Virus record (IMG/VR): IMGVR_UViG_3300017991_000048
Location: 1 to 64,000 of that record
Direction: 5' to 3' (one strand)
Length of the DNA stretch: 64,000 nucleotides
Below the pieces are notes generated by a model that saw nothing but the letters and a program-made list of their open reading frames with translations, ran no database searches and was not told the origin of the DNA. A program made the position numbers and the translations under genes. Below are positions 10,024-62,678 of this stretch, in pieces; the first letter of the stretch is position 1, and the number at the start of each line of letters is the position of its first letter.

Positions 10024-10767
10024 CTAACTCCTCTGTACGAATGCTTCGATACTCCAATCGATTGTTGCAACTTCATTCGGAACCGCTCTGATAACGAAGT
10101 CCGTGCCAGATACCACTGCATCGATACTCCAGATCAGACTCTCACTTTCCTGCGGACCGTTTAGTATTAGCAGATCATGCACCCGTTCTGCATTTGTGTC
10201 ATCTCTGCTGAATAGTGCCGAAAACACCCAAGTCTTATACTTCAACACAGTGCTATCGGTCGCAACGATAGTCCCCCAAATTACGTATGCTCCGTTGTCA
10301 GTGCCGGGATCAAAAGTGCCGAGATTCGCTGCCGTATCCGAGCTGGTCTGAATATCGGCATCAATATCAAACCCGCCACCGCCGCCACCGGGGATTGTTA
10401 CGACCGTTTTTCCGCCAGCATCCGCTGCTGTAACACCGGCTCCTACGAAGTTTAGATCGTCCCTTTGGGTTAATGGGGTGCCCTCATCTTCAATTGTATG
10501 ACCGCTTCCTGCTGGCCCGGTTGGACCAATAGGCCCGGTTGGACCAATAGGCCCGGTTGCCCCAAAACCGCCTGTTGGTCCAGTGGCTCCGGGTCCGCCT
10601 GTTGGCCCTGTCGGTCCTGGGGGTCCCGGTGGTCCGCCTGGGCCTGTAGCGCCGGTATGATCCAGAAGCTCTGGCTGGCCGCTCTCGTTGATATAAAACA
10701 CCACATACATATCCGAAGGCGGCGGCGGCACCGCCCCAGAAGGTCGTCTTCTTAATGCTATAGTCAT
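10024..10767 (-). CDS. Collagen-like (Gly-X-Y) fibre protein
   Basis: About 16 GXY triplets ([14 protein letters not shown]...), EDEG..NFVG.GVT module shared with 11375..12727; start MTIALRRR. Confidence 0.8.
10501..10650 (-). repeat. Collagen-encoding 9/18-nt tandem repeats
   Basis: ggcccggttggaccaata-type repeats on the + strand. Confidence 0.85.
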
Positions 10768-15979: not shown

Positions 15980-16604
15980 GGACGACTCTACACCACTACC
16001 AAAAACAATGGAATATGGGCAACTTAGGGCCGAAAGCCTCGATGAAGTGGCTCCCCGGTTGGTGGAATTCACACAAGATCTCATCAAACGCCTGAGAGCT
16101 TGTAAAATCAAAATTGAAACTACTACGGTTTACCTGTTGAACTCTACGGATCATCCCATCGAAGTCCCATGTTCTGGAAACGGAGTTCCCATAGAAATGA
16201 ACTTCGATGCCTCGCTCCCGGTCTGGTCACCAGAGCCCAGAGCCAGAGTCCAGGTCAGTTTCAACCACGGAAAGCGTTACTTCTATCTTGAACGAGGCAA
16301 AGAGCTTCGGAACGCCAAGTTTCCGATGTCCAAGGTGCTAAAACGGTTTCTCGGTGAAATTAAGATCACTGAACGAAAGGTTCGAATTCAATCAGAAAAG
16401 AAAGAGAAAGCTCTAAAAGCAAGGCAAAACCTCAGTAAGCTCTGCAAAGAAATGGGAGCCTTACCCACGAAAAACCCCGATATTGTTCAGAAAAACAGCG
16501 TGAAGGTCACGTGCTTACCGCAAACGCCTACTCAAGTGTCCCTCACCCTTACTGTTACACACGACCAAGTACTTGAAATCATTAGAAAGTATACAAAAGT
16601 TTAA
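15978..16604 (+). CDS. Hypothetical protein
   Basis: Start MDDSTPL within ORF 15876..16604; coiled-coil C-half. Confidence 0.7.
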   Translation: MDDSTPLPKTMEYGQLRAESLDEVAPRLVEFTQDLIKRLRACKIKIETTTVYLLNSTDHPIEVPCSGNGVPIEMNFDASLPVWSPEPRARVQVSFNHGKRYFYLERGKELRNAKFPMSKVLKRFLGEIKITERKVRIQSEKKEKALKARQNLSKLCKEMGALPTKNPDIVQKNSVKVTCLPQTPTQVSLTLTVTHDQVLEIIRKYTKV

Positions 16605-28354: not shown

Positions 28355-28606
28355 ATGGAAGTTTTCAGACGCTTGTCAAACCCACCTTCTAAGTGGCATG
28401 TAGCCAACCCGGACGACGGGACAATAGCACTCTGTGGGTGGCACACAAACCCTGACGGAAATTCTGATTATATAAAACAGGCGATCGAAGTTTTCGAAAG
28501 CCACGCAATACCCGACGACAACCCCAGTGAGATATACTGCCATAACTGTCTACGAAAACGAAGAAAGGCTCTGAAAGACCTCTGGGATCACTTGTCCGAA
28601 AGTTGA
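28355..28606 (+). CDS. Zn-finger protein with LWDHL tag
   Basis: WH......LCG...CHNC; ends DLWDHLSES. Confidence 0.8.
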   Translation: MEVFRRLSNPPSKWHVANPDDGTIALCGWHTNPDGNSDYIKQAIEVFESHAIPDDNPSEIYCHNCLRKRRKALKDLWDHLSES

Positions 28607-28627
28607 TTAAATCAACTTGGTGTAATT

Positions 28628-28849
28628 GTGTCAGAACCTCCAAAATGCAAATGCGGAAAAACTCTTGATCTGTGGCCTGCTCGACACCATACCTTTCGAA
28701 CCTTCACCTCAACCCGAAAAAGCTTTTTACCCCCGACCTACGTTTGCACCAGATGCCATCTATCTTATCCAATAGATCACTTCGATACCAAAAACCTCTG
28801 GGAACATTTATCTGAGGACTCAAATGGCAAAAAAACTCAAAACAAGTGA
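28628..28849 (+). CDS. Zn-ribbon protein with LWEHL tag
   Basis: CKCG...CTRC; NLWEHLSED. Confidence 0.7.
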   Translation: MSEPPKCKCGKTLDLWPARHHTFRTFTSTRKSFLPPTYVCTRCHLSYPIDHFDTKNLWEHLSEDSNGKKTQNK

Positions 28850-29321
28850 CTTTTTCAACACCGCTGTCTCCAGAGACCTCGCTCAGGCTGTTGAAGTTAT
28901 TAAAGCTCAAGAGCAGACTGTTCAGGCTGTTAAAGCTCAAGCTGTTAAGGTTCAAGCCTACACACCCGCCACAGACTTCCAGACGGTTTACGCTACTGAA
29001 AACCCCTTCCATACAACGGAAGAGGGCGAAGTTAGGCGTCTAAGCCCTAAGAAACAAGGAGCCCAAAAAACGCTCGAAAAGTATAGACACAGTGTGCTGA
29101 AAGGTTACCCACGCGGAGAGACGGTAGAGAAATACTATAGAGCGGCTGTTATCTTAGACGAAGAACTGGACCACGACATTGAACTCGATCATATAAGATT
29201 GCTCTTGCGTGTTATTGACAAACTGCGAAACGAGCTTGATGTTGATACCCCCGGTGAACCGCCGCCTAAGAAGAGAAAGGCAAACGACCTTTGGGGCCAT
29301 CTTACCAACGATGAAGAATGA
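28824..29321 (+). CDS. Hypothetical protein with LWGHL tag
   Basis: Ends NDLWGHLTNDEE. Confidence 0.75.
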   Translation: MAKKLKTSDFFNTAVSRDLAQAVEVIKAQEQTVQAVKAQAVKVQAYTPATDFQTVYATENPFHTTEEGEVRRLSPKKQGAQKTLEKYRHSVLKGYPRGETVEKYYRAAVILDEELDHDIELDHIRLLLRVIDKLRNELDVDTPGEPPPKKRKANDLWGHLTNDEE

Positions 29322-30864: not shown

Positions 30865-31149
30865 ATGGACAGGATACCTGAAACCATAATGTTTGGGGGT
30901 AAAGAACGGAAGGTCGAGCCGGGTTGGAGCAACTGGTATAAAATCCGCATTGGAAAGCTAGGAACGCTGGATATCCATGATTGCGGCAAATCCGGGTTTC
31001 AAGCCTTTTGCAATACAATTATCCCAAGGTGCAACGCCCAAGGATTCACGTTCCACGAGGCCGTCAGCAGCCTGGAAATAGCGATGAATGACTACCTTGA
31101 GGCTCTAGGTGTGGAACTCGGCTACGTGAGTTTTGATAAAAGCCGTTGA
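30865..31149 (+). CDS. P.T.MFGG.ERKV family protein (HicB-like C-half)
   Basis: Paralogous to 52169..52711 and 54776..55042; FTFHEAVSSLE. Confidence 0.7.
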   Translation: MDRIPETIMFGGKERKVEPGWSNWYKIRIGKLGTLDIHDCGKSGFQAFCNTIIPRCNAQGFTFHEAVSSLEIAMNDYLEALGVELGYVSFDKSR

Positions 31150-31320
31150 TCCGGAACTTTATTATATCAAATGCTGACGGGAACAATTTTGCTTGTTAGC
31201 GAAATCATTTACTTTTTTGTCCAGAAATTTTTATTTTCGTGTAAATTGTTGAGATCGGTCCTGTTTTCGGTGTAGTAGATACTGTCAACCTTTTGGCGTA
31301 GGGCCAGAAAGAAAATGTAA

Positions 31321-32013
31321 ATGTTAACTAAGGCTAGAAAATATCAAGCAACCCTGAGAGGCGTGACTCCAATACTTATGAACAATGACAATCTCGCCTG
31401 GAAGGAAAGGGTAAAAGCGTGGCAGATCGACCCGGCCAACAAATCCAAGAGCGTAAAAGGTGACGACCGTTCCCCCGCCTGGACTTGGATTGGCTGTTTG
31501 TACAAGGCCAATGACTTGATCGTCGTTGAGTCTGACGCGATCATGGCAATGCTCCGAGACGCTGGACAGAAATGTCCAACCGGAAAAGGTAGGGCATCTT
31601 ACAAGGCCATAACCCAAAGCGGCATCCTTGTGGACCAAATCGGCTGGCCGGTGGAGACCTCCAAGGGGTTCATAAAGTGGTCATCTTTTGACGCCCTCCA
31701 TGATGACGAGGACTTTACAGTTCACGAAAAGGTGGCGAACCAGCACGGGATTGACCTTTTTGTCAAAAGGGTAACAATTGGCAACAGTAAGTGGGTCAGA
31801 GTCAGACCACGATTCGATCAGTGGAAGATTGAGGGAACCATTACTGTAGTGGACGATACCCTTACAACGGACGTCCTTCAGACTATCTTTAATGTCGGAG
31901 GGCACCGCTGCGGTCTGTGTGACTGGAGACCGGGAAGTCCCAAGAAGCCCGGTAGTTTCGGCATGTTTGAAACCACACTCAAAGAGATTAAAATGGAAGG
32001 AGTTGCGGCATGA
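31321..32013 (+). CDS. Stand-alone RAMP-superfamily (Cas7/Cas5-like fold) protein
   Basis: N-terminal LRGVTPILMN strand, IVVESDAIMAMLRDAG helix, RVRPRFDQW, C-terminal Gly-rich loop GGHRCGLCDWRPG....GSFGMFE; no other cas genes. Confidence 0.7.
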   Translation: MLTKARKYQATLRGVTPILMNNDNLAWKERVKAWQIDPANKSKSVKGDDRSPAWTWIGCLYKANDLIVVESDAIMAMLRDAGQKCPTGKGRASYKAITQSGILVDQIGWPVETSKGFIKWSSFDALHDDEDFTVHEKVANQHGIDLFVKRVTIGNSKWVRVRPRFDQWKIEGTITVVDDTLTTDVLQTIFNVGGHRCGLCDWRPGSPKKPGSFGMFETTLKEIKMEGVAA

Positions 32014-32462
32014 GTGGCAAGACAAACGTATTTTTCGGCGGGGTGCCAACGGCTCCCGACGTAAAGAAACTCATGGATCATTTCGGAGTGCCTGAGGAAA
32101 ACGTGTTACTGAACTGGACCGAAATCGAAGAGGTGATAGGAGAGGAGAAAGGCTCCAGCCGTTTCACTTCCGTTACCGGGGCATGGAGGAAAAAGCTTCG
32201 TAAGGACCATAATATCGAAATGATCCCCGAAATCGGCAAGGGTCTGAAAGCCGCTAATCCGCATGAGCGTGTTGATCTGGCAGGAGGTCTTATCCACAAA
32301 GCCACCAATAGCATCAAACGCTCCATCTCTGTAGCCGACAAGACAGACGTAACCCGATTGGACGAAGAGCATAAGAAACGACACACTTTTCTTAGTGTGT
32401 TAGGCGGAAAGATGCGTATGCTTTTCATCAACGAGCAGAAGAAGCTGCCTACCGGCGAATAG
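32010..32462 (+). CDS. RAMP-associated accessory protein, possibly winged-helix
   Basis: ATGA overlap with RAMP gene; 150 aa, basic; directly precedes pentamer array. Confidence 0.75.
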   Translation: MSGKTNVFFGGVPTAPDVKKLMDHFGVPEENVLLNWTEIEEVIGEEKGSSRFTSVTGAWRKKLRKDHNIEMIPEIGKGLKAANPHERVDLAGGLIHKATNSIKRSISVADKTDVTRLDEEHKKRHTFLSVLGGKMRMLFINEQKKLPTGE

Positions 32463-32471
32463 CCGGTAAAC

Positions 32472-32900
32472 TGAGGATTCTGTTGCGGCAGGGTGTGCTT
32501 CGATTCGGCAGGGTTAGCCAGGGCTTGGTCAGGTCCGCTACGGTATGGTTGGGTGAGGATTATGGTTCGGCAAGGTTCGCCAGGGTACGGTAGGCTGCGG
32601 TCTACTACGGTTCGGTTGGTACGCTTTGGTTCGGTCGGGTCTGGTGAGGATTATGGCCCGGTGAGTTGGGCAGCGAGGTTAGGGACGTGGTTTGTTGAGA
32701 CTCGGTTGGCTTTGGCCCTGTTTGGTACGCTGCGGCAAGGTGAGGACCCTGGTTTGGTGAAGGTATGGCACGTTTCGTTTCGCTATGGTTGGGCCGGGTG
32801 AGGTATGGTACGGTCGGGTTGCCTTTGGTTTGGTGTGGCGAGGATTGCGTTTTGGCGAGCTATGGTATGGCAAGGTTTGGCGAGGATTAGGGTATGGCTA
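32472..32900 (+). ncRNA. G-G-Y-N-N pentamer array, candidate guide-RNA locus (five units)
   Basis: About 75 tandem pentamers with mostly GGT/GGC (else GNY) at positions 1-3 and variable positions 4-5; 7-nt GGA(T/C)nnn spacers after (G)YGA at 32475, 32557, 32648, 32744, 32842, 32884. Confidence 0.75.
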
Positions 32901-33091
32901 TGACCAACGCAGAGATTTATTGCTTTACCTGGAAATATATCGGAGGTGTCTACCACGCAAAAAATGAGGACGGTAATCCTCTGTGTGGTGCTTACCCAAC
33001 CAATCTCAGATCCTCCGATGTCAAACCCAGAGGCTACCGGCCCTGTAAACGGTGTTTCCGGGACTTGTGGGATCACTTGATTAAGGAATAA
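32900..33091 (+). CDS. Zn-finger protein with LWDHL tag
   Basis: YH......LCG...CKRC, paralog of 28355; ends DLWDHLIKE. Confidence 0.8.
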   Translation: MTNAEIYCFTWKYIGGVYHAKNEDGNPLCGAYPTNLRSSDVKPRGYRPCKRCFRDLWDHLIKE

Positions 33092-33290
33092 AACGATGGA
33101 TGGCGATGGTAATATTCCCGACAGCATTATCGAGTCTACGGTCCGCAAGTGGCTGAAGGGCAACTACCGTGATGTTTACCCAACCCCCACAATGATATAC
33201 AACGCTCTCTTGCGTATTAAAACTGGCTCTCAAAGAAACCGCCAGTCTGAAGTGGGAAGAGATAAAAGACGAAGCCCTGGTAAAGTAACT

Positions 33291-33653
33291 CTACTCAGAC
33301 TGTGCAGCGACCCCGCCCCAATAGTAAGCGAACTCCCAAAGAGCGCTGGATATATTACGGGTATGAGCGAGAGGCATACGAGAGGTAGCGCTCATGGCTC
33401 TTTTGAGTGAGACTAATAACTCCGTGTGCATATCTTTAAGCGCACGAGCGGCTTCAGGATCGGCAGCTTTGAACCCGGCCTCATAAGATTCCATCATGGC
33501 TCTTATGATGGGCATGTCGGCTGTGGCGACCTTGTTAGCCAACTCTCTCAAGTCAGAAGCGAGCTTTTCGCGGCTTGGCTCCGGGCCTTGGGCATACTCA
33601 AGAAGGGTCTGTAGTTCTTGGGCTAATTCTTGGGGATTGGCTATCTTTTCCAT
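33291..33653 (-). CDS. Protein with MEKIANPQELA leader module
   Basis: Leader then VATA; RBS AGGGAG. Confidence 0.75.
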   Translation of the reverse strand: MEKIANPQELAQELQTLLEYAQGPEPSREKLASDLRELANKVATADMPIIRAMMESYEAGFKAADPEAARALKDMHTELLVSLKRAMSATSRMPLAHTRNISSALWEFAYYWGGVAAQSE

Positions 33654-35025: not shown

Positions 35026-35344
35026 TCACCCTTTTCGCTCGTTGCCCTCTGTGGTCAAGGCTGACATAGCCATCCCCAAAGCCACAATGCGGTTCGGGTG
35101 CGTAACCTCAATATAAGCGTCCTCGCTGTGATGGAGCTTCACGCGCCAGAAAGGGATTTGATCAGGCTTGTGTTCCAGGGACCTCGATATAAGCATCCTC
35201 ACTGTGATGGAGCTTCACCCGCCAGAAAGGGATTTGATCAGGCTTGTGCTCCAGGGACAGAGTTATCTCTGTCGGACCCCATGCTTTCTCAGCCGCTTCG
35301 CGTACAGCGGTAATTTCGTCTCTACGAGTTACGGTGGTATCCAT
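35026..35344 (-). pseudogene. Small gene disrupted by a 76-bp tandem duplication
   Basis: MDTTVT...YIEV reading resumes as THPNRIVALG...ERKG* only if one copy is removed. Confidence 0.6.
35105..35256. repeat. 76-bp tandem duplication (2 copies, 5 differences)
   Basis: 35105-35180 vs 35181-35256. Confidence 0.9.
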
Positions 35345-35388
35345 TACCCAAGGCTTTACACCAAAACAAGATGAGAAACTTGATAAAA

Positions 35389-35637
35389 TCAAGTTTCCCG
35401 AATCACACTCCAGAGGGTCACATCGTCACCTCTCTCACACTCGATCAGAGCAACCACGTCCGGGTGATGCCCCAAATGGCGAAGAATCCGATTGCCGTAC
35501 TTCTTACACCTGTGGTGCTGGAAGGCCGCGCCCACTCTGTGCTGCCCCTCTTCTTTGGGGCTGAGGTGTTTACAGTCAGACTCACATAAGCTGTGTGGTT
35601 TGGCCAAACGGCTACAGAAATCGCAAGATACAGGCAT
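35389..35637 (-). CDS. Cys/His-rich protein with LWSVI tag variant
   Basis: Paralog of 61812..62099 (C..DC.HL.P.E..Q....H.C.KYG); ends TLWSVIRET. Confidence 0.7.
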   Translation of the reverse strand: MPVSCDFCSRLAKPHSLCESDCKHLSPKEEGQHRVGAAFQHHRCKKYGNRILRHLGHHPDVVALIECERGDDVTLWSVIRET

Positions 35638-36200: not shown

Positions 36201-36884
36201 ATGAGACTAACCCCGCAAAAAATTGTGGCCCGTTATGCGGCATCCCGGCCCAAGCTCTTCCTTTATAAAAGCGCCGATCAAATCGCTGTCAATTTGGGAA
36301 CGGACACAGAAGTTGGCTACTTGTTGCTTGGCCCAGTATCGTCAGTAAAGTCCAAATGCGAGTCTTTGGTAGAAGAGATCCAAAGAGAAGTCTTCGGAAG
36401 TAAGCCTGTACCACTGTGGCACGTAACCGATGTTCAACTGGACCCTGAGTTTCGAGGAAAGGGGTGGGGCCTCAAGATGTACGAGAAAGCCTTACGTGCA
36501 GCCCGTCCCGCAATCATCGTGTCCGGTGACTGTATAGGATATGGAACAACCGTTGTTTCTGACCCGATAATGCCGGGATTCTGTTCTTTGCTGTGCTTCA
36601 CAGCATGGCGGCAGAGTCTCAAAAACACGCATAAAGAACTGTGTCCAGCGGAGTCTAAGATTACTGATGAGTATGGCAGAAAAGCCCGTACTCTAACTTG
36701 CCACCTGCCTAGAGGTCATAAAGGCAGACACGCGGTGGAAATGAGTTGGTACGAAAAAGAGAACGTGATGCGCTCTCACGACATTGTGATTACCTGGGCA
36801 GGCGATGACTTACAAGAGGTCGATAATACCGGAGAGCCTTTGCCAAAAGATAAAGACCTGTGGGACCACCTGAGTGAAGCTTGA
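36201..36884 (+). CDS. Chimeric GNAT-like / Cys-His protein with LWDHL tag
   Basis: KIVARY N-terminus, LDPEFRGKGWGLKMY GNAT loop, FCSLLC and C.LPRGH.G.H, ends DLWDHLSEA. Confidence 0.7.
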   Translation: MRLTPQKIVARYAASRPKLFLYKSADQIAVNLGTDTEVGYLLLGPVSSVKSKCESLVEEIQREVFGSKPVPLWHVTDVQLDPEFRGKGWGLKMYEKALRAARPAIIVSGDCIGYGTTVVSDPIMPGFCSLLCFTAWRQSLKNTHKELCPAESKITDEYGRKARTLTCHLPRGHKGRHAVEMSWYEKENVMRSHDIVITWAGDDLQEVDNTGEPLPKDKDLWDHLSEA

Positions 36885-39894: not shown

Positions 39895-40761
39895 ATGTCT
39901 GAGGATACCATACAGAAGAGGCTGGCACAGTATAAGAAGCTGACGGCTGATATAGTCAAGCTCGAAGAGACTATAGTCAAATGCAAACAACTCAAGAGCG
40001 ATGTGGCCAAGGGGTTGCTGGACGAGAACGGCAAGGACAAGCTCTATGACCTGGGAGACGGCATACCCCTCTTCGTCTCAGGCACCAAAGCAGGCACTTG
40101 GTTTTTGGCCCCGCGTAAACGTACCATAGGTAGGAAAAAGAAGAAAAAGGCCGATTCCAAGCCCAAGGAAAAAGGGCCTTCTGAGCCCAAGGCCAAGAAA
40201 GGCAAGACGAAAAAGGTGATCCAGAACGGGCAGGTAGTAGAAGTCCCTGCTGAGAGCCCTGCCAAAAAGGGCCGCGTTATAGAGGCATCTGCGACCCTTA
40301 CCGGAACAGGCGCTATTTCGGCCCCTGAGCCAGACCCTGTTGAGCCGCCTCCCAGTCGGGATCTTCAGGCGGAGCCAGAACCAGTCGAGCCTGTTGAACC
40401 AGAACCTGTTGAACCAGTCGAGCCTGTAGAGGCCGATTCTGCCCCTGTTGAACCAGATCCGGAGCCAGACCCTGTTGAACCTGTTGCCCCAGTGGAACCA
40501 GACCCTGTTGAACCAGAGCCTGCCAAAAAGCCGGTCAAAATTACCCAAGAAATGGTTGATGAAATGAAGGCCCGTGCAGATCAGGGCATAGTGGACGCTG
40601 ATGCCGAAGCCGAAGCTCTCGAAAAGGCCCTACAAGAGGCTGACGAAAGCCCCGATCCAGAGCCCGTTTCTGACGCTACGGAGCAACAGGGCGCTTCTGA
40701 GAGCGATGAAGAGCTTGATCCTCTGGAACAGGCGCTTGCTGAATTGGAGCTTGATTCTTGA
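39895..40761 (+). CDS. Protein with Lys-rich and PEPVE-repeat regions
   Basis: RBS GGAGG; N-terminal coiled coil, VEP(E/D)P repeats, acidic helical C-tail. Confidence 0.8.
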   Translation: MSEDTIQKRLAQYKKLTADIVKLEETIVKCKQLKSDVAKGLLDENGKDKLYDLGDGIPLFVSGTKAGTWFLAPRKRTIGRKKKKKADSKPKEKGPSEPKAKKGKTKKVIQNGQVVEVPAESPAKKGRVIEASATLTGTGAISAPEPDPVEPPPSRDLQAEPEPVEPVEPEPVEPVEPVEADSAPVEPDPEPDPVEPVAPVEPDPVEPEPAKKPVKITQEMVDEMKARADQGIVDADAEAEALEKALQEADESPDPEPVSDATEQQGASESDEELDPLEQALAELELDS

Positions 40762-51711: not shown

Positions 51712-52194
51712 ATGCCTGTCTGCAAGCACTGCAATTCCAATATCCCCTATGAAGGGGGTGTGATCGTTTCCGGGAAGCTTGAATACTGCTCTTTGACGTG
51801 CTTTGCGGTGCGTGTGTTGGAACCTGACCCCACTGACGCAAATCCTAAAAACGAGCTTCACGGCGGGTGTGTAGTCTGTCAAAAGCTAATTTACAATGTA
51901 GGCCCGGTTCATATCCCTGACCCAGACGACGCCGGTATGTGGTTCTGCCCCGATTGCTGCCCACCCGATGAGATAGTTAAGAAGGTGCGTCTTCAGGACG
52001 GTGATTATTACGTCTGTACTCATTGTGGCATGAGGTATCTTATCTCTACCTTCCCTCTCTGGCTTTCCGCGTTTGATAACGGCGTTTATTGCAGTTTGGC
52101 CTGTAGGCAAGGCTCCAGGAATGGCATCCGGAAGCCGTCGCCTGCCAACCTTTGGGACCATCTAACCTTTGGAGGTTCAAGTGACCATACCTAA
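51712..52194 (+). CDS. Multi-Zn-finger (YCSxxC) protein with LWDHL tag
   Basis: Three CxxC/YCSLxC units; paralog of 62178. Confidence 0.75.
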   Translation: MPVCKHCNSNIPYEGGVIVSGKLEYCSLTCFAVRVLEPDPTDANPKNELHGGCVVCQKLIYNVGPVHIPDPDDAGMWFCPDCCPPDEIVKKVRLQDGDYYVCTHCGMRYLISTFPLWLSAFDNGVYCSLACRQGSRNGIRKPSPANLWDHLTFGGSSDHT

Positions 52195-53816: not shown

Positions 53817-54065
53817 ATGCCTGACATGCCTGACAGCGAATCCCTCAGAGCCTTGCAAGCCCTGTTATCAGAATATGACAAAGCGAATGATGAGACTCTG
53901 GAAGCTCTCAAAGCCGGGGATATGGCTAAGTATGAAAAACTCGCTCAAGCGAAAATGAAAGCCATAGGCGAGCTTGGCCCTGAAGCCTTAAGAAATGTTA
54001 TGAGGGAGCATCCCGAATTCAGACCCCAAGGTTATGACCCGGACTCGGAGGATCAAAATGCCTGA
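53817..54065 (+). CDS. Small helical protein
   Basis: In operon. Confidence 0.65.
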   Translation: MPDMPDSESLRALQALLSEYDKANDETLEALKAGDMAKYEKLAQAKMKAIGELGPEALRNVMREHPEFRPQGYDPDSEDQNA

Positions 54066-54444
54066 GTACGGACCTTCTGAAACCATTGCGGAGTTAAGAT
54101 TCCGGTGTGGTCAGTATCAGGACAGGCTTGATGACCTCCAAATGAGGCTCAATAACATTGAACGTGTCGGCAAAGATTTGGTCCATGAACTCAAAAGTAG
54201 ACGGCCCCGACACCCAGAAGACTCTGAGGAGTATGAGTTAACAGCCGAACTTATGTTTGAAACGGGCCAGCTTCGTGACGGTGTTTGGGATCTCGACCTT
54301 GAAAAGGTTTTGGAGTACCTCGGAGAACGTTACAGATATACAGAGAACCCTTGGTTGATCAAAAGTCAGGTTGACACTGTTTGGGTAAGGTTCCAAGCCG
54401 AACAAACCAAACATTCCAACCTTTGGGATCATTTGAAGGGGTAG
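54058..54444 (+). CDS. Helical-domain paralog with LWDHL tag
   Basis: Closely similar to C-half of 53219. Confidence 0.8.
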   Translation: MPEYGPSETIAELRFRCGQYQDRLDDLQMRLNNIERVGKDLVHELKSRRPRHPEDSEEYELTAELMFETGQLRDGVWDLDLEKVLEYLGERYRYTENPWLIKSQVDTVWVRFQAEQTKHSNLWDHLKG

Positions 54445-62177: not shown

Positions 62178-62678
62178 ATGCCCCAATGTAGACAATGCCG
62201 CTGTGTTTACACCCACAAGGGTGTGACTTTTCTCGGACCAAATAGTAACATTCATTGGTGCTCATGGGTCTGTTATAACCTAGCCAGAGCCAACGCCGTC
62301 ACCGAAAAGTGTGACGAATGCGGTAAGCATCTTCATAAGGGGCCTGCTTACATTTGCGAGACTCTCACAGGTGGTAATTACTTCCGGTGTGAGGCGTGTT
62401 ATTCAGTTGCCGATCCAAACGAAATCCCGGAAGTCAAATGTTTTCGCGATCGAATGGTTCATGTGCGAATTAATGACAATGAGATGTTTTTCCGTTGCGA
62501 TTCGTGCAACGGTTACGCCCCTCTTGAACGCCCTGTTTACTTTAGTCTCTACAACCATGGAACCTATTGTAGCCCTGTCTGTAGTCACAATAGTCATGGC
62601 AAACAAGACCCTGAATCCGACAAGGATCTTTGGGGCCACCTAACAAAGGAGCCTGAACAATGTCAGAAGAAGAGTTAG
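62178..62678 (+). CDS. Multi-Zn-finger protein with LWGHL tag
   Basis: Paralog of 51712; WCSWVC, YCSPVC. Confidence 0.75.
   Translation: MPQCRQCRCVYTHKGVTFLGPNSNIHWCSWVCYNLARANAVTEKCDECGKHLHKGPAYICETLTGGNYFRCEACYSVADPNEIPEVKCFRDRMVHVRINDNEMFFRCDSCNGYAPLERPVYFSLYNHGTYCSPVCSHNSHGKQDPESDKDLWGHLTKEPEQCQKKS

What the first reader, a model, noticed from the sequence alone, without database searches (positions are those of the whole stretch)
31321..32900. Stand-alone RAMP/Cas7-like gene coupled to a GGY-NN pentamer array: candidate non-CRISPR RNA-guided system
Seen: a 230-aa protein with an N-terminal LRGVTPILMN strand, an RVRPRF..W segment and a C-terminal Gly-rich loop (GG.RCGLCDWRP....GSFGMF), translationally coupled to one partner gene and followed immediately by ~420 nt of non-coding 5-nt periodicity. 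Positions 1-3 are G-(G)-Y and positions 4-5 vary freely. No cas1/2/3/10 or repeat-spacer array is present. Established: RAMP proteins (Cas5/6/7) have this strand-plus-Gly-loop signature, and Cas7 polymerises along guide RNA with a fixed nucleotide period. Inference: each subunit binds a constant GGY while the NN dinucleotides form a discontinuous, programmable address for DNA or RNA, e.g. of competing phages or host defence genes. I recall a recent report of phage RAMP plus GGY/NN-repeat RNA systems (VIPR); that recollection is unverified and should be checked before claiming novelty.
Basis: partly seen in the sequence, partly recalled or inferred. Interest (0 to 1): 0.95.

Follow-up and report, generated by a model that had tools for sequence, protein, structure and literature searches.

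The report
VIPR RNA-guided locus in jumbo phage
This is a real but already described kind of system: a phage-encoded VIPR locus (a minimal Cas7-like protein, a DNA-binding helper and an array of GGY-NN pentamer guide RNAs), here as a divergent new example in a 398-kb phage genome.

Summary
Window 31321-32013 encodes a 230-aa protein that matches the solved SUSP1 Vipr protein (PDB 36pp) at E=9.5e-6 alone and E=3e-15 to 4e-17 as a family profile. It folds as a Cas7-type RAMP. The overlapping 150-aa gene is a winged-helix protein related to SUSP1 Vap1. The 431-nt intergenic tract at 32463-32893 holds 82 pentamers (G 93%, G 67%, Y 98%, N, N). 51 are perfect GGY, against 21.5±3.3 in shuffles. Six GGATTNN heptamers divide it into five units. 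In 79 of 80 related viral loci the same protein sits beside GGYNN arrays on its own strand. VIPR systems were described in two 2026 bioRxiv preprints, which showed that one Vipr protomer binds each GGY and the NN pairs read double-stranded DNA with a one-base skip to silence competing phages. This locus is a divergent member. It lies in a jumbo-phage contig and has no structured vrRNA tail, a unique junction variant, a relaxed second G, and substitutions at two predicted GGY-contact residues. No natural target could be identified. Novelty: new member of a known kind.

The parts
31321..32013 (+). vipr: 230-aa minimal RAMP (Cas7-like). The thumb hairpin is about residues 145-165 (R160, R162). 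The G-loop is about residues 194-216 (D201-W202-R203).
   Evidence: Single-sequence match to PDB 36pp 'SUSP1 Vipr protein', E=9.5e-6. Family profile match E=3.2e-15, full length. hhalign probability 98.9%, E=4e-17. AF2 pLDDT 92.4. Foldseek top hits are all Cas7/Csm3/Csm5/Csf2. The start at 31321 is supported by homolog N-termini.
32010..32462 (+). vap (Vap1-like accessory gene): 150 aa, N-terminal winged helix plus a long helical hairpin. Its start overlaps the vipr stop (ATGA).
   Evidence: A homolog lies adjacent to vipr in 69 of 80 related loci, in variable order. hhalign to SUSP1 Vap1 gives probability 91.9%, E=7e-7. AF2 pLDDT 92.4. Foldseek neighbours are weak (E>=0.017) but are all winged-helix DNA binders.
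32463..32893 (+). vrRNA array: 82 GGYNN pentamers in five junction-delimited units.
   Evidence: The predicted RNA structure is weaker than in all 100 shuffles, z=+2.2. No Rfam family matches.
32475..32481 (+). Junction heptamer 1 (GGATTCT), at the start of the array.
   Evidence: Clade-wide 7-nt junction with consensus GGC-RA|GGAACRN|GGY.
32482..32556 (+). Unit 1: 15 pentamers with no phase slip, ending GGTGA.
32557..32563 (+). Junction heptamer 2 (GGATTAT).
32564..32647 (+). Unit 2: 16 pentamers with one 4-nt slip after pentamer 10.
32648..32654 (+). Junction heptamer 3 (GGATTAT).
32655..32743 (+). Unit 3: 17 pentamers with 4 slip nucleotides. It may contain a decayed junction near 32672-32683.
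32744..32750 (+). Junction heptamer 4 (GGACCCT).
32751..32841 (+). Unit 4: 18 pentamers with one 1-nt slip. It holds the best-preserved run, seven perfect units at 32787-32821.
32842..32848 (+). Junction heptamer 5 (GGATTGC).
32849..32883 (+). Unit 5: 7 pentamers.
32884..32890 (+). Junction heptamer 6 (GGATTAG), at the end of the array. Its GAGGA may double as the ribosome-binding site of the next gene (ATG at 32894).
   Evidence: The ribosome-binding role is inference.
31150..31320 (+). A/T-rich intergenic region upstream of vipr. It is the presumed promoter region and, unlike in many relatives, carries no vrRNA array.
   Evidence: No sigma-70-type match was found here, so the promoter assignment is inference.

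Best explanation
The locus is a VIPR (Viral Interference Programmable Repeat) system carried by a roughly 398-kb phage genome.

By homology with the characterised SUSP1 system, the proposed mechanism runs as follows:
- The array is transcribed and cut or terminated into vrRNAs.
- One Vipr protomer binds each pentamer and flips out and sequesters G1-G2-Y3. The predicted contacts are thumb R162 and G-loop D201, W202 and R203.
- The resulting helical filament displays the NN dinucleotides.
- The NN pairs bind double-stranded DNA in a gapped register (two paired bases, one skipped).
- The bound filament blocks transcription of the target, most likely a gene of a competing phage, satellite or prophage.
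- The winged-helix Vap1-like partner enhances the effect.

Shown here: protein homology and fold, array anatomy, and conservation of the protein-array-partner association across 79 of 80 viral loci.

Inferred from the literature: RNA binding, the xNN DNA code and silencing.

Specific to this clade: vrRNAs are separated by a 12-nt junction (GGY-RA + GGA-NY-NN) instead of a structured tail. I infer that this junction is the unit boundary or processing and registration signal.
For: Vipr homology and fold:
- Single-sequence match to PDB 36pp SUSP1 Vipr, E=9.5e-6. Profile E=3.2e-15, full length. hhalign probability 98.9%.
- Confident model (pLDDT 92.4) whose top 30+ PDB neighbours are Cas7-class RAMPs.
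- Of the SUSP1 GGY-contact residues, R138, D177, W178 and R179 align to invariant R162, D201, W202 and R203.

Array:
- 82 pentamers with 51 perfect GGY, against 21.5 +/- 3.3 in shuffles.
- Unique in the window and on the gene strand.
- Unstructured as RNA.
- 79 of 80 related IMG/VR loci carry (GGYNN)>=4 runs directly beside vipr on its strand, with almost none elsewhere.
- NN is hypervariable between conserved junctions.

Partner, context and controls:
- The partner gene is conserved in 69 of 80 loci and is related to SUSP1 Vap1, with a winged-helix fold.
- The contig is a 398-kb IMG/VR viral genome.
- The positive control on phage SUSP1 behaves the same way.
- The active SUSP1 vrRNAs are about as degenerate: 74% perfect against 62% here.
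Against: - No natural target was found. Eleven collection scans with guide seeds from the window (seven viral, two metagenome, two genome) and local searches gave only chance-level hits. A twelfth scan, with a relative's guide, gave one weak hit.
- Expression of the array is not shown, and no promoter or terminator stands out.
- The window's Vipr departs from its family's near-invariant residues at N21 (His in at least 90% of relatives, equivalent to the SUSP1 H17 contact with G1) and at A73 (Asn in relatives, equivalent to SUSP1 M72 in the Y3 pocket).
- The second G is present in only 67% of units, and the units are longer (15-18 pentamers) than the relatives' typical 7-13. Partial decay therefore cannot be excluded.
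- There is no conserved structured 3' tail as in type II vrRNAs.
Confidence: 0.9

Rival explanations
1. It is a VIPR locus by descent, but decaying or non-functional. The array has drifted, with many GCY/GTY units, phase slips and fused units, and the protein has lost two RNA-contact residues, so it no longer silences anything.
For: - Only 62% of units are perfect and G2 is present in 67%, against a median of 91% perfect inside relatives' strict-run arrays.
- Units of 15-18 pentamers suggest lost junctions, with a possible decayed junction near 32672-32683.
- N21 and A73 replace residues that are near-invariant in the family.
- No target was found.
Against: - Both ORFs are intact, full-length and confidently folded.
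- R162, D201, W202 and R203 are conserved.
- Y3 (98%) and G1 (93%) are strongly maintained, and the junction motif is kept six times, which argues for ongoing selection.
- Experimentally active SUSP1 vrRNAs are similarly degenerate at 74% perfect.
- The comparison with relatives is biased, because their arrays were defined from strict runs.
Confidence: 0.12
2. It is a reduced CRISPR-Cas remnant: a solo Cas7 from a type III, IV or VII system captured by a phage. The G-rich tract would be unrelated low-complexity DNA or a leader of the downstream gene.
For: The best solved-structure fold neighbours are type VII and type III Cas7 proteins.
Against: - Sequence homology points to Vipr, not to any Cas7. 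The only PDB sequence hit is SUSP1 Vipr.
- No Pfam, NCBIfam or PADLOC Cas model hits.
- There is no repeat-spacer array.
- The pentamer array co-occurs with the protein in 79 of 80 loci, so it is not incidental.
Confidence: 0.02
3. The pentamer tract is not a guide array. It would instead be a structural or regulatory element (for example G-quadruplex-forming DNA or RNA, or a Gly/Trp-rich coding repeat) that happens to lie next to the RAMP gene.
For: - GGNNN repeats could in principle form two-tier G-quadruplexes (general knowledge).
- A 102-aa ORF (32493-32801) can be drawn through the tract.
Against: - A 5-nt period with phase slips of 1, 2, 4 and 7 nt is incompatible with a conserved reading frame.
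- Conservation falls on G-G-Y at the nucleotide level, with free NN.
- The same architecture is experimentally shown to be guide RNA in SUSP1.
- The strict pyrimidine at position 3 (98%) is explained by the Vipr Y-pocket but not by quadruplex formation.
Confidence: 0.02

Closest known systems
Type II VIPR system of Escherichia phage SUSP1 (vipr-vap1 plus four vrRNAs; bioRxiv 10.64898/2026.04.26.720920 and .720927; PDB 36pp)
   Same: - The Vipr is homologous over its full length.
- The partner is Vap1-like.
- The gene order vipr, then vap, then a downstream array is the same, on one strand.
- Both use GGYNN pentamer guides with free NN and comparable internal degeneracy.
- Both are phage-encoded.
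   Different: - Identity is only about 21%, and the G-loop carries a 7-residue insertion.
- There is no roughly 45-nt pseudoknot tail and no per-vrRNA leader or promoter. Units are separated by a 7-nt heptamer instead.
- There is no vrRNA upstream of vipr.
- The relaxed position is G2 (67%) here and G1 (76%) in SUSP1.
- SUSP1 H17 aligns with N21 in the window.
- The host genome is 398 kb, against 91 kb for SUSP1.
'Staggered' vrRNA arrays described for other VIPR types (fig. S18 of 10.64898/2026.04.26.720920)
   Same: [quoted passage not shown] This fits the heptamer-punctuated arrays of this clade.
   Different: Only the figure legend is available to me. I could not check whether the published staggered arrays use the GGY-RA|GGA-NY-NN junction, or which VIPR type they belong to.
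Class 1 CRISPR-Cas backbone subunit Cas7 (Csm3 / type VII Cas7 / Csf2)
   Same: Both have an RRM core, thumb hairpin and glycine-rich loop. Both polymerise along a guide RNA with a fixed period and flip out bases at regular intervals (mechanism).
   Different: - The period is 5 nt rather than 6.
- Three guide bases are sequestered per unit rather than one.
- There is no second RRM, no Cas5, Cas6 or large subunit, no repeat-spacer array and no adaptation genes.
- There is no detectable sequence similarity to Cas7 families.

Membership tests
VIPR system | Protein homologous to a characterised Vipr | tested here: met
   phmmer to PDB 36pp_D SUSP1 Vipr, E=9.5e-6. Profile E=3.2e-15 over profile positions 6-218 and chain residues 4-189. 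hhalign probability 98.9%, E=4e-17.
VIPR system | Minimal RAMP fold: a single RRM core, thumb and glycine-rich loop | tested here: met
   AF2 pLDDT 92.4. The beta-hairpin spans 145-165 and the low-confidence Gly-rich loop spans 201-210. The top Foldseek PDB hits are all Cas7-class RAMPs, best E=1.5e-5. BFVD neighbours include a 'RAMP superfamily protein'.
VIPR system | GGY-contact residues of SUSP1 Vipr (H17, R138, D177, W178, R179) | tested here: inconclusive
   R162, D201, W202 and R203 are invariant in the family and present in the window. The H17 equivalent is His in at least 90% of relatives but Asn (N21) in the window. The alignment is at about 21% identity, so positional equivalence at the N-terminus is less certain.
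VIPR system | Adjacent array of at least 4 tandem YNNGG/GGYNN units on the vipr strand | tested here: met
   Runs of 3-7 perfect units and 82 units overall at 32463-32893. None elsewhere in the window.
VIPR system | GGY conserved and NN hypervariable across related loci | tested here: met
   79 of 80 loci carry arrays. Junction and GGY are conserved while NN strings differ between and within loci.
VIPR system | Compact locus with a vap accessory gene and no cas genes or CRISPR array | tested here: met
   The partner is conserved in 69 of 80 loci and related to SUSP1 Vap1. No repeat-spacer array. No Cas-like large ORFs. Small cas2-like genes were not screened exhaustively.
VIPR system | Predominantly viral or proviral genome context | tested here: met
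   The window is IMG/VR UViG_3300017991_000048, 398,071 bp. 168 viral contigs encode relatives. The window contains phage-type head-decoration/Ig-like and sigma-factor-like genes.
VIPR system | vrRNAs expressed and co-purifying with Vipr | not testable with these tools
   This needs small-RNA sequencing and a pull-down.
VIPR system | Natural targets matching NN by the one-base-skip rule (at least 80% NN match) | tested here: inconclusive
   No excess over permuted guides in the window or the 80 loci. Exact-seed scans gave a portal gene at 23/32 (72%), a baseplate gene and others with no extension, and two 20/20 genome hits where about 1.1 are expected by chance.
VIPR type II (SUSP1-like) array architecture | Each repeat tract capped by a conserved structured 3' tail (pseudoknot) | tested here: not met
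   Units are separated only by 7-nt junctions. The RNA is less structured than shuffles. SUSP1 shows the tails and leaders clearly under the same inspection.
VIPR hammerhead-interspersed arrays (types I/V) | Hammerhead ribozymes between vrRNAs | tested here: not met
   No Rfam match with E<=1 in 31000-33300 on either strand.
CRISPR-Cas class 1 | Repeat-spacer array, adaptation genes and multi-subunit effector genes | tested here: not met
   Only the Cas7-like fold is shared.

The most novel reading that the evidence does not exclude
This clade (over 1,100 metagenomic relatives) could be a VIPR variant whose biology is not yet described in three respects.

- It has tail-less arrays in which a 12-nt junction (GGY-RA + GGA-NY-NN) serves as the unit boundary. 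The junction might be cut or registered by Vipr itself, in the manner of Cas6.
- The window's member may show protein-RNA co-variation. H21N, N73A and H158W substitutions occur at or near predicted GGY contacts, together with a shifted repeat grammar: G2 relaxed instead of G1, and a GGATT junction instead of GGAAC.
- It is deployed by a 398-kb jumbo phage.

If this holds, it would give a natural series for learning how Vipr repeat specificity can be re-tuned.
Probability: 0.2. Interest if true: 0.55.

Novelty: new member of a known kind. Interest (0 to 1): 0.35.

Why it matters
The result confirms, from raw sequence, a member of the recently described VIPR family, a programmable DNA-recognition system that is not CRISPR. 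It extends the family to a jumbo-phage genome and to a large clade of more than 1,100 proteins. Pfam, NCBIfam and PADLOC have no model for this clade, and PHROG 4652 lists it as 'unknown function'.

The clade's compact, heptamer-punctuated arrays offer comparative material on how vrRNA units are delimited. The window's divergent repeat grammar, paired with substitutions at predicted RNA-contact residues, offers similar material on how tolerant GGY recognition is. Both points matter for engineering VIPR tools.

The result does not open a new category.

Tried and rejected
1. Target prediction with the published xNN rule.
- Local search: the window (array masked) and the 80 related loci were searched with skips of 0-3 against permuted-guide controls. 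Nothing exceeded the controls.
- Six IMG/VR scans used 9-pentamer seeds from units 1-4. Four found nothing.
  - One found a single hit with 1 of 14 matches outside the seed.
  - One found six contigs in three unrelated gene groups: portal, baseplate wedge and unknown. They share only a 9-residue peptide read with the skip at the wobble position, and extension was 4-5 of 14. I rejected these as codon-structured chance matches.
- Two metagenome scans: one was empty, and one re-found the portal group at 23/32.
- Two genome scans: one was empty. The other gave two unrelated 20/20 hits, in a Pelomonas HD-domain gene and in a marine MAG, where about 1.1 are expected by chance and there was no prophage context.
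- 182 guides from relatives searched against 0.69 Mb of local DNA showed no excess over permuted guides for any skip rule.
- One relative's guide, whose core is shared by several guides, gave one IMG/VR hit at 21/24. The skipped base falls on codon position 1 there, so it is weak.

2. Assigning one of the seven published VIPR types. The paper's phylogeny and data tables are not held and no accessions were retrievable for homologs, so this could not be done. Vap1 homology points towards type II, but the array architecture does not.

3. Searches that found no match: tblastn of the Vipr against 50,697 GenBank phages, and Pfam, NCBIfam and PADLOC models.

4. The sigma-70 promoter and intrinsic-terminator scan found nothing above shuffles.

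5. The stronger period-5 signal at 16201-16600 is not a GGY array.
Full report
**1. Observation**

Its stop overlaps the start of a 150-aa ORF (32010-32462) in an ATGA. A 431-nt G/T-rich tract follows, up to the next gene at 32894.

Guanine autocorrelation in that tract peaks at lags 5, 10, 15 and 20. A dynamic-programming parse that allows phase slips resolves 82 pentamers. Their composition is G 93%, G 67%, pyrimidine 98%, then two free positions. 51 units are perfect GGY, against 21.5 +/- 3.3 (maximum 31) in 300 dinucleotide-preserving shuffles.

All runs of three or more perfect units on the + strand of the 64-kb window fall inside this tract. The minus strand has a single 3-unit run elsewhere.

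Six 7-nt insertions (GGATTCT, GGATTAT twice, GGACCCT, GGATTGC, GGATTAG) each follow a pentamer ending in GA. They divide the tract into five units of 15, 16, 17, 18 and 7 pentamers.

**2. The literature lead**

[quoted passage not shown] According to these preprints:

- The system consists of a minimal RAMP (Vipr), an accessory gene (vap) and vrRNAs of 9-16 YNNGG repeats.
- It is found mainly in phages and prophages.
- One Vipr protomer binds each repeat and sequesters GGY.
- The NN dinucleotides pair with double-stranded DNA, skipping every third base.
- The bound filament represses transcription of competing phages, satellites or prophages.
- Seven types are defined, with several array architectures: tail-capped, staggered, hammerhead-interspersed and single.

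**3. The protein**

No Pfam, NCBIfam or PADLOC model hits it. PHROG 4652 ('unknown function') does, at E=5e-16.

Against all PDB sequences the only significant match is 36pp, 'SUSP1 Vipr protein'.

- Single sequence: E=9.5e-6, over the thumb and G-loop.
- Profile of 40 homologs: E=3.2e-15, end to end.
- hhalign against the SUSP1 gene product fetched from GenBank KT454805: probability 98.9%, E=4e-17.

The AlphaFold model is confident (pLDDT 92.4). Its 30+ best solved-structure neighbours are all Cas7-class RAMPs: type VII Cas7, Csm3, Csm5 and Csf2. In the viral predicted-structure library the three significant neighbours include one annotated as a RAMP superfamily protein.

SUSP1 residues shown to hold G2 and Y3 (R138, W178, R179) and G1 (D177) align with R162, W202, R203 and D201, which are invariant in the family. 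H17, the other G1 contact, aligns with a position that is His in at least 90% of relatives but Asn (N21) in the window. M72, in the Y3 pocket, aligns with a near-invariant Asn that is Ala (A73) in the window.

Homolog N-termini support the ATG at 31321. One database gene call (211 aa) starts 19 residues too late and removes the first beta-strand.

**4. The partner**

A homolog of the 150-aa protein lies next to vipr in 69 of 80 related loci, upstream or downstream, sometimes with an array in between.

Its model (pLDDT 92.4) is a winged helix followed by a long two-helix hairpin. Structural neighbours are weak (E>=0.017) but uniformly winged-helix DNA binders.

Its family profile aligns with SUSP1 Vap1 at 91.9% probability, E=7e-7, over 103 columns. 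In the paper, Vap1 enhanced VIPR-mediated protection.

**5. Comparative evidence for the array**

The protein family is large: 1,152 relatives in the 5.8-billion-protein collection, none with an informative name. 168 IMG/VR contigs encode relatives.

In 79 of the 80 best loci, runs of at least four GGYNN units lie on the vipr strand. They sit immediately upstream of vipr, immediately downstream, or after the partner gene. Almost none occur elsewhere in the 8-kb loci or on the other strand.

The commonest interruption between runs is exactly 7 nt (149 cases), with consensus GGC-RA | GGAACRN | GGY. The window's GGYGA | GGATTNN | GGY is a variant of this junction and is unique among the 80 loci.

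Between junctions the NN strings are hypervariable, and units are 7-18 pentamers long.

As a positive control, the same detector run on phage SUSP1 finds arrays only in the two intergenic regions flanking its vipr-vap1 pair, on the gene strand.

SUSP1's experimentally validated vrRNAs are 74% perfect under my parser, against 62% for the window. The window's degeneracy therefore does not argue against function. The relaxed position differs, however: G1 in SUSP1 (76%) and G2 here (67%).

**6. Architecture**

SUSP1 vrRNAs each have a leader and a roughly 45-nt structured tail. The window has neither.

- There is no Rfam hit, which excludes hammerhead-interspersed arrays.
- The array RNA folds less stably than all 100 shuffles, z=+2.2. 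This is as expected for a single-stranded guide coated by protein.
- The compact junction-delimited layout fits the paper's brief description of 'staggered' arrays. I could not see that figure.
- Only 11 of the 80 loci share the window's exact layout of vipr, partner, then array, with no upstream array.
- Promoters and terminators are not identifiable by sigma-70 or intrinsic-terminator consensus.

**7. Targets**

I applied the published rule by replacing each GGY with one wildcard.

*Local searches.* Nothing exceeded permuted-guide controls in the window or the related loci at any skip length. This is consistent with the paper's report of no self-targeting.

*Viral collection scans.* These accept only exact patterns, so I used 9-10-pentamer seeds and tested hits by extension.

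- Four scans were empty.
- One gave a single non-extending hit.
- One gave three unrelated gene groups sharing a 9-residue peptide, with the skip at the wobble position. The best was a portal gene at 23/32, below the 80% criterion.

*Genome scans.* One was empty. The other gave two unrelated 20/20 matches for a 10-pentamer sub-unit, where about 1.1 are expected by chance. The one whose gene could be identified is an ordinary HD-domain gene.

*Guides from relatives.* These were equally uninformative in the small local set. One guide with a core shared among several guides hit a viral contig at 21/24, but the skip fell on codon position 1.

Targets are therefore unresolved. The tools cannot run the mismatch-tolerant search that the paper used.

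**8. Context**

The window is the first 64 kb of a 398,071-bp IMG/VR viral contig. It contains the following:

- mostly small ORFs of unknown function;
- a few phage-type proteins (head-decoration/Ig-like, sigma-factor-like);
- sugar-modifying enzymes;
- no tRNAs.

**9. Verdict**

This is a bona fide VIPR locus. The protein, fold, array, accessory-gene and viral-context criteria are met. Expression and targeting are untested or inconclusive.

The mechanism is inferred by homology from SUSP1. The locus is a divergent new member of a known kind, not a new category.

The residual novelty lies in four features:

- the jumbo-phage host genome;
- the tail-less, heptamer-punctuated array;
- the G2-relaxed repeat grammar;
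- the substitutions at predicted GGY contacts.

Noticed in passing
window 28355-28606, 28607-28849, 28824-29321, 32894-33091, 36201-36884, 51712-52194, 54034-54444, 62178-62678 (all + strand): Eight ORFs of unrelated sequence and length (65-227 aa; several are Cys-rich and zinc-ribbon-like) all end in (D/N)LW(D/E/G)HL followed by 2-12 residues. My rough chance expectation for the motif in the six-frame translation is about 0.02. It looks like a shared C-terminal tag (sorting, packaging, partner-binding or degradation signal) in this large phage. The gene directly downstream of the vrRNA array carries it. No paper in the library mentions the motif.
   Followed up: partly
window 31321-32013: Relative to 39 homologs, the window's Vipr departs from near-invariant residues at H21N, N73A and H158W (the last in the thumb hairpin), among others. 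The first two align with SUSP1 residues that contact G1 and the Y3 pocket. At the same time the window's repeats relax G2 and use a unique GGATT junction. This may be protein-RNA co-variation.
   Followed up: partly
L088 (phage SUSP1) 27500-28030 and 29062-29510, compared with window 32463-32893: Degenerate pentamers in the experimentally active SUSP1 vrRNAs lose G1 (TGT/AGT units; G1 76%, G2 97%). Those in the window lose G2 (GCT/GTT units; G1 93%, G2 67%). I have no explanation for this.
   Followed up: partly
window 32879-32896: The last junction (GGCGA GGATTAG) places a GAGGA about 8 nt upstream of the ATG at 32894. The junction motif may therefore double as the ribosome-binding site of the downstream gene.
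   Followed up: no
window 32447-32471: A 10-bp inverted repeat (6 G-C pairs) spans the vap stop codon, immediately before the first junction heptamer. It could mark the 5' boundary of the array transcript.
   Followed up: no
L025 5312-5356 and 5679-5738; L034 1400-1449 and 1556-1600: Distinct guides in two related phage loci share the NN core CC-AG-GG-GT-TT-TA and then diverge, which suggests several guides converging on one target site. The only exact-seed hit (L093, 21/24) puts the skipped base at codon position 1, so it is unconvincing.
   Followed up: partly
window 31321 vs 31378: One public gene call for this protein (211 aa, ENA-derived) starts at Met20 and removes the conserved first beta-strand. 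The 230-aa call (JGI/Logan) agrees with the homologs.
   Followed up: yes
window 35105-35258: A 76-nt tandem duplication (2.0 copies, 93% identity) lies within overlapping minus-strand ORFs 35026-35202 and 35162-35392, duplicating a peptide segment (…SLEHKPDQIPFWRVKLHHSEDAYIEV…).
   Followed up: no
window 10514-10559 and 40443-40522: There is a perfect 18-nt x 2.6 tandem repeat with neighbouring 9-nt G/C-rich repeats near 10.4-10.6 kb, and a 15-nt x 5.3 repeat at 40.4 kb. These are probably coding repeats.
   Followed up: no
window 16201-16600: This region has the highest period-5 spectral power in the window, higher than the vrRNA array, but it contains no GGY pentamers on either strand. The cause was not determined.
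   Followed up: partly
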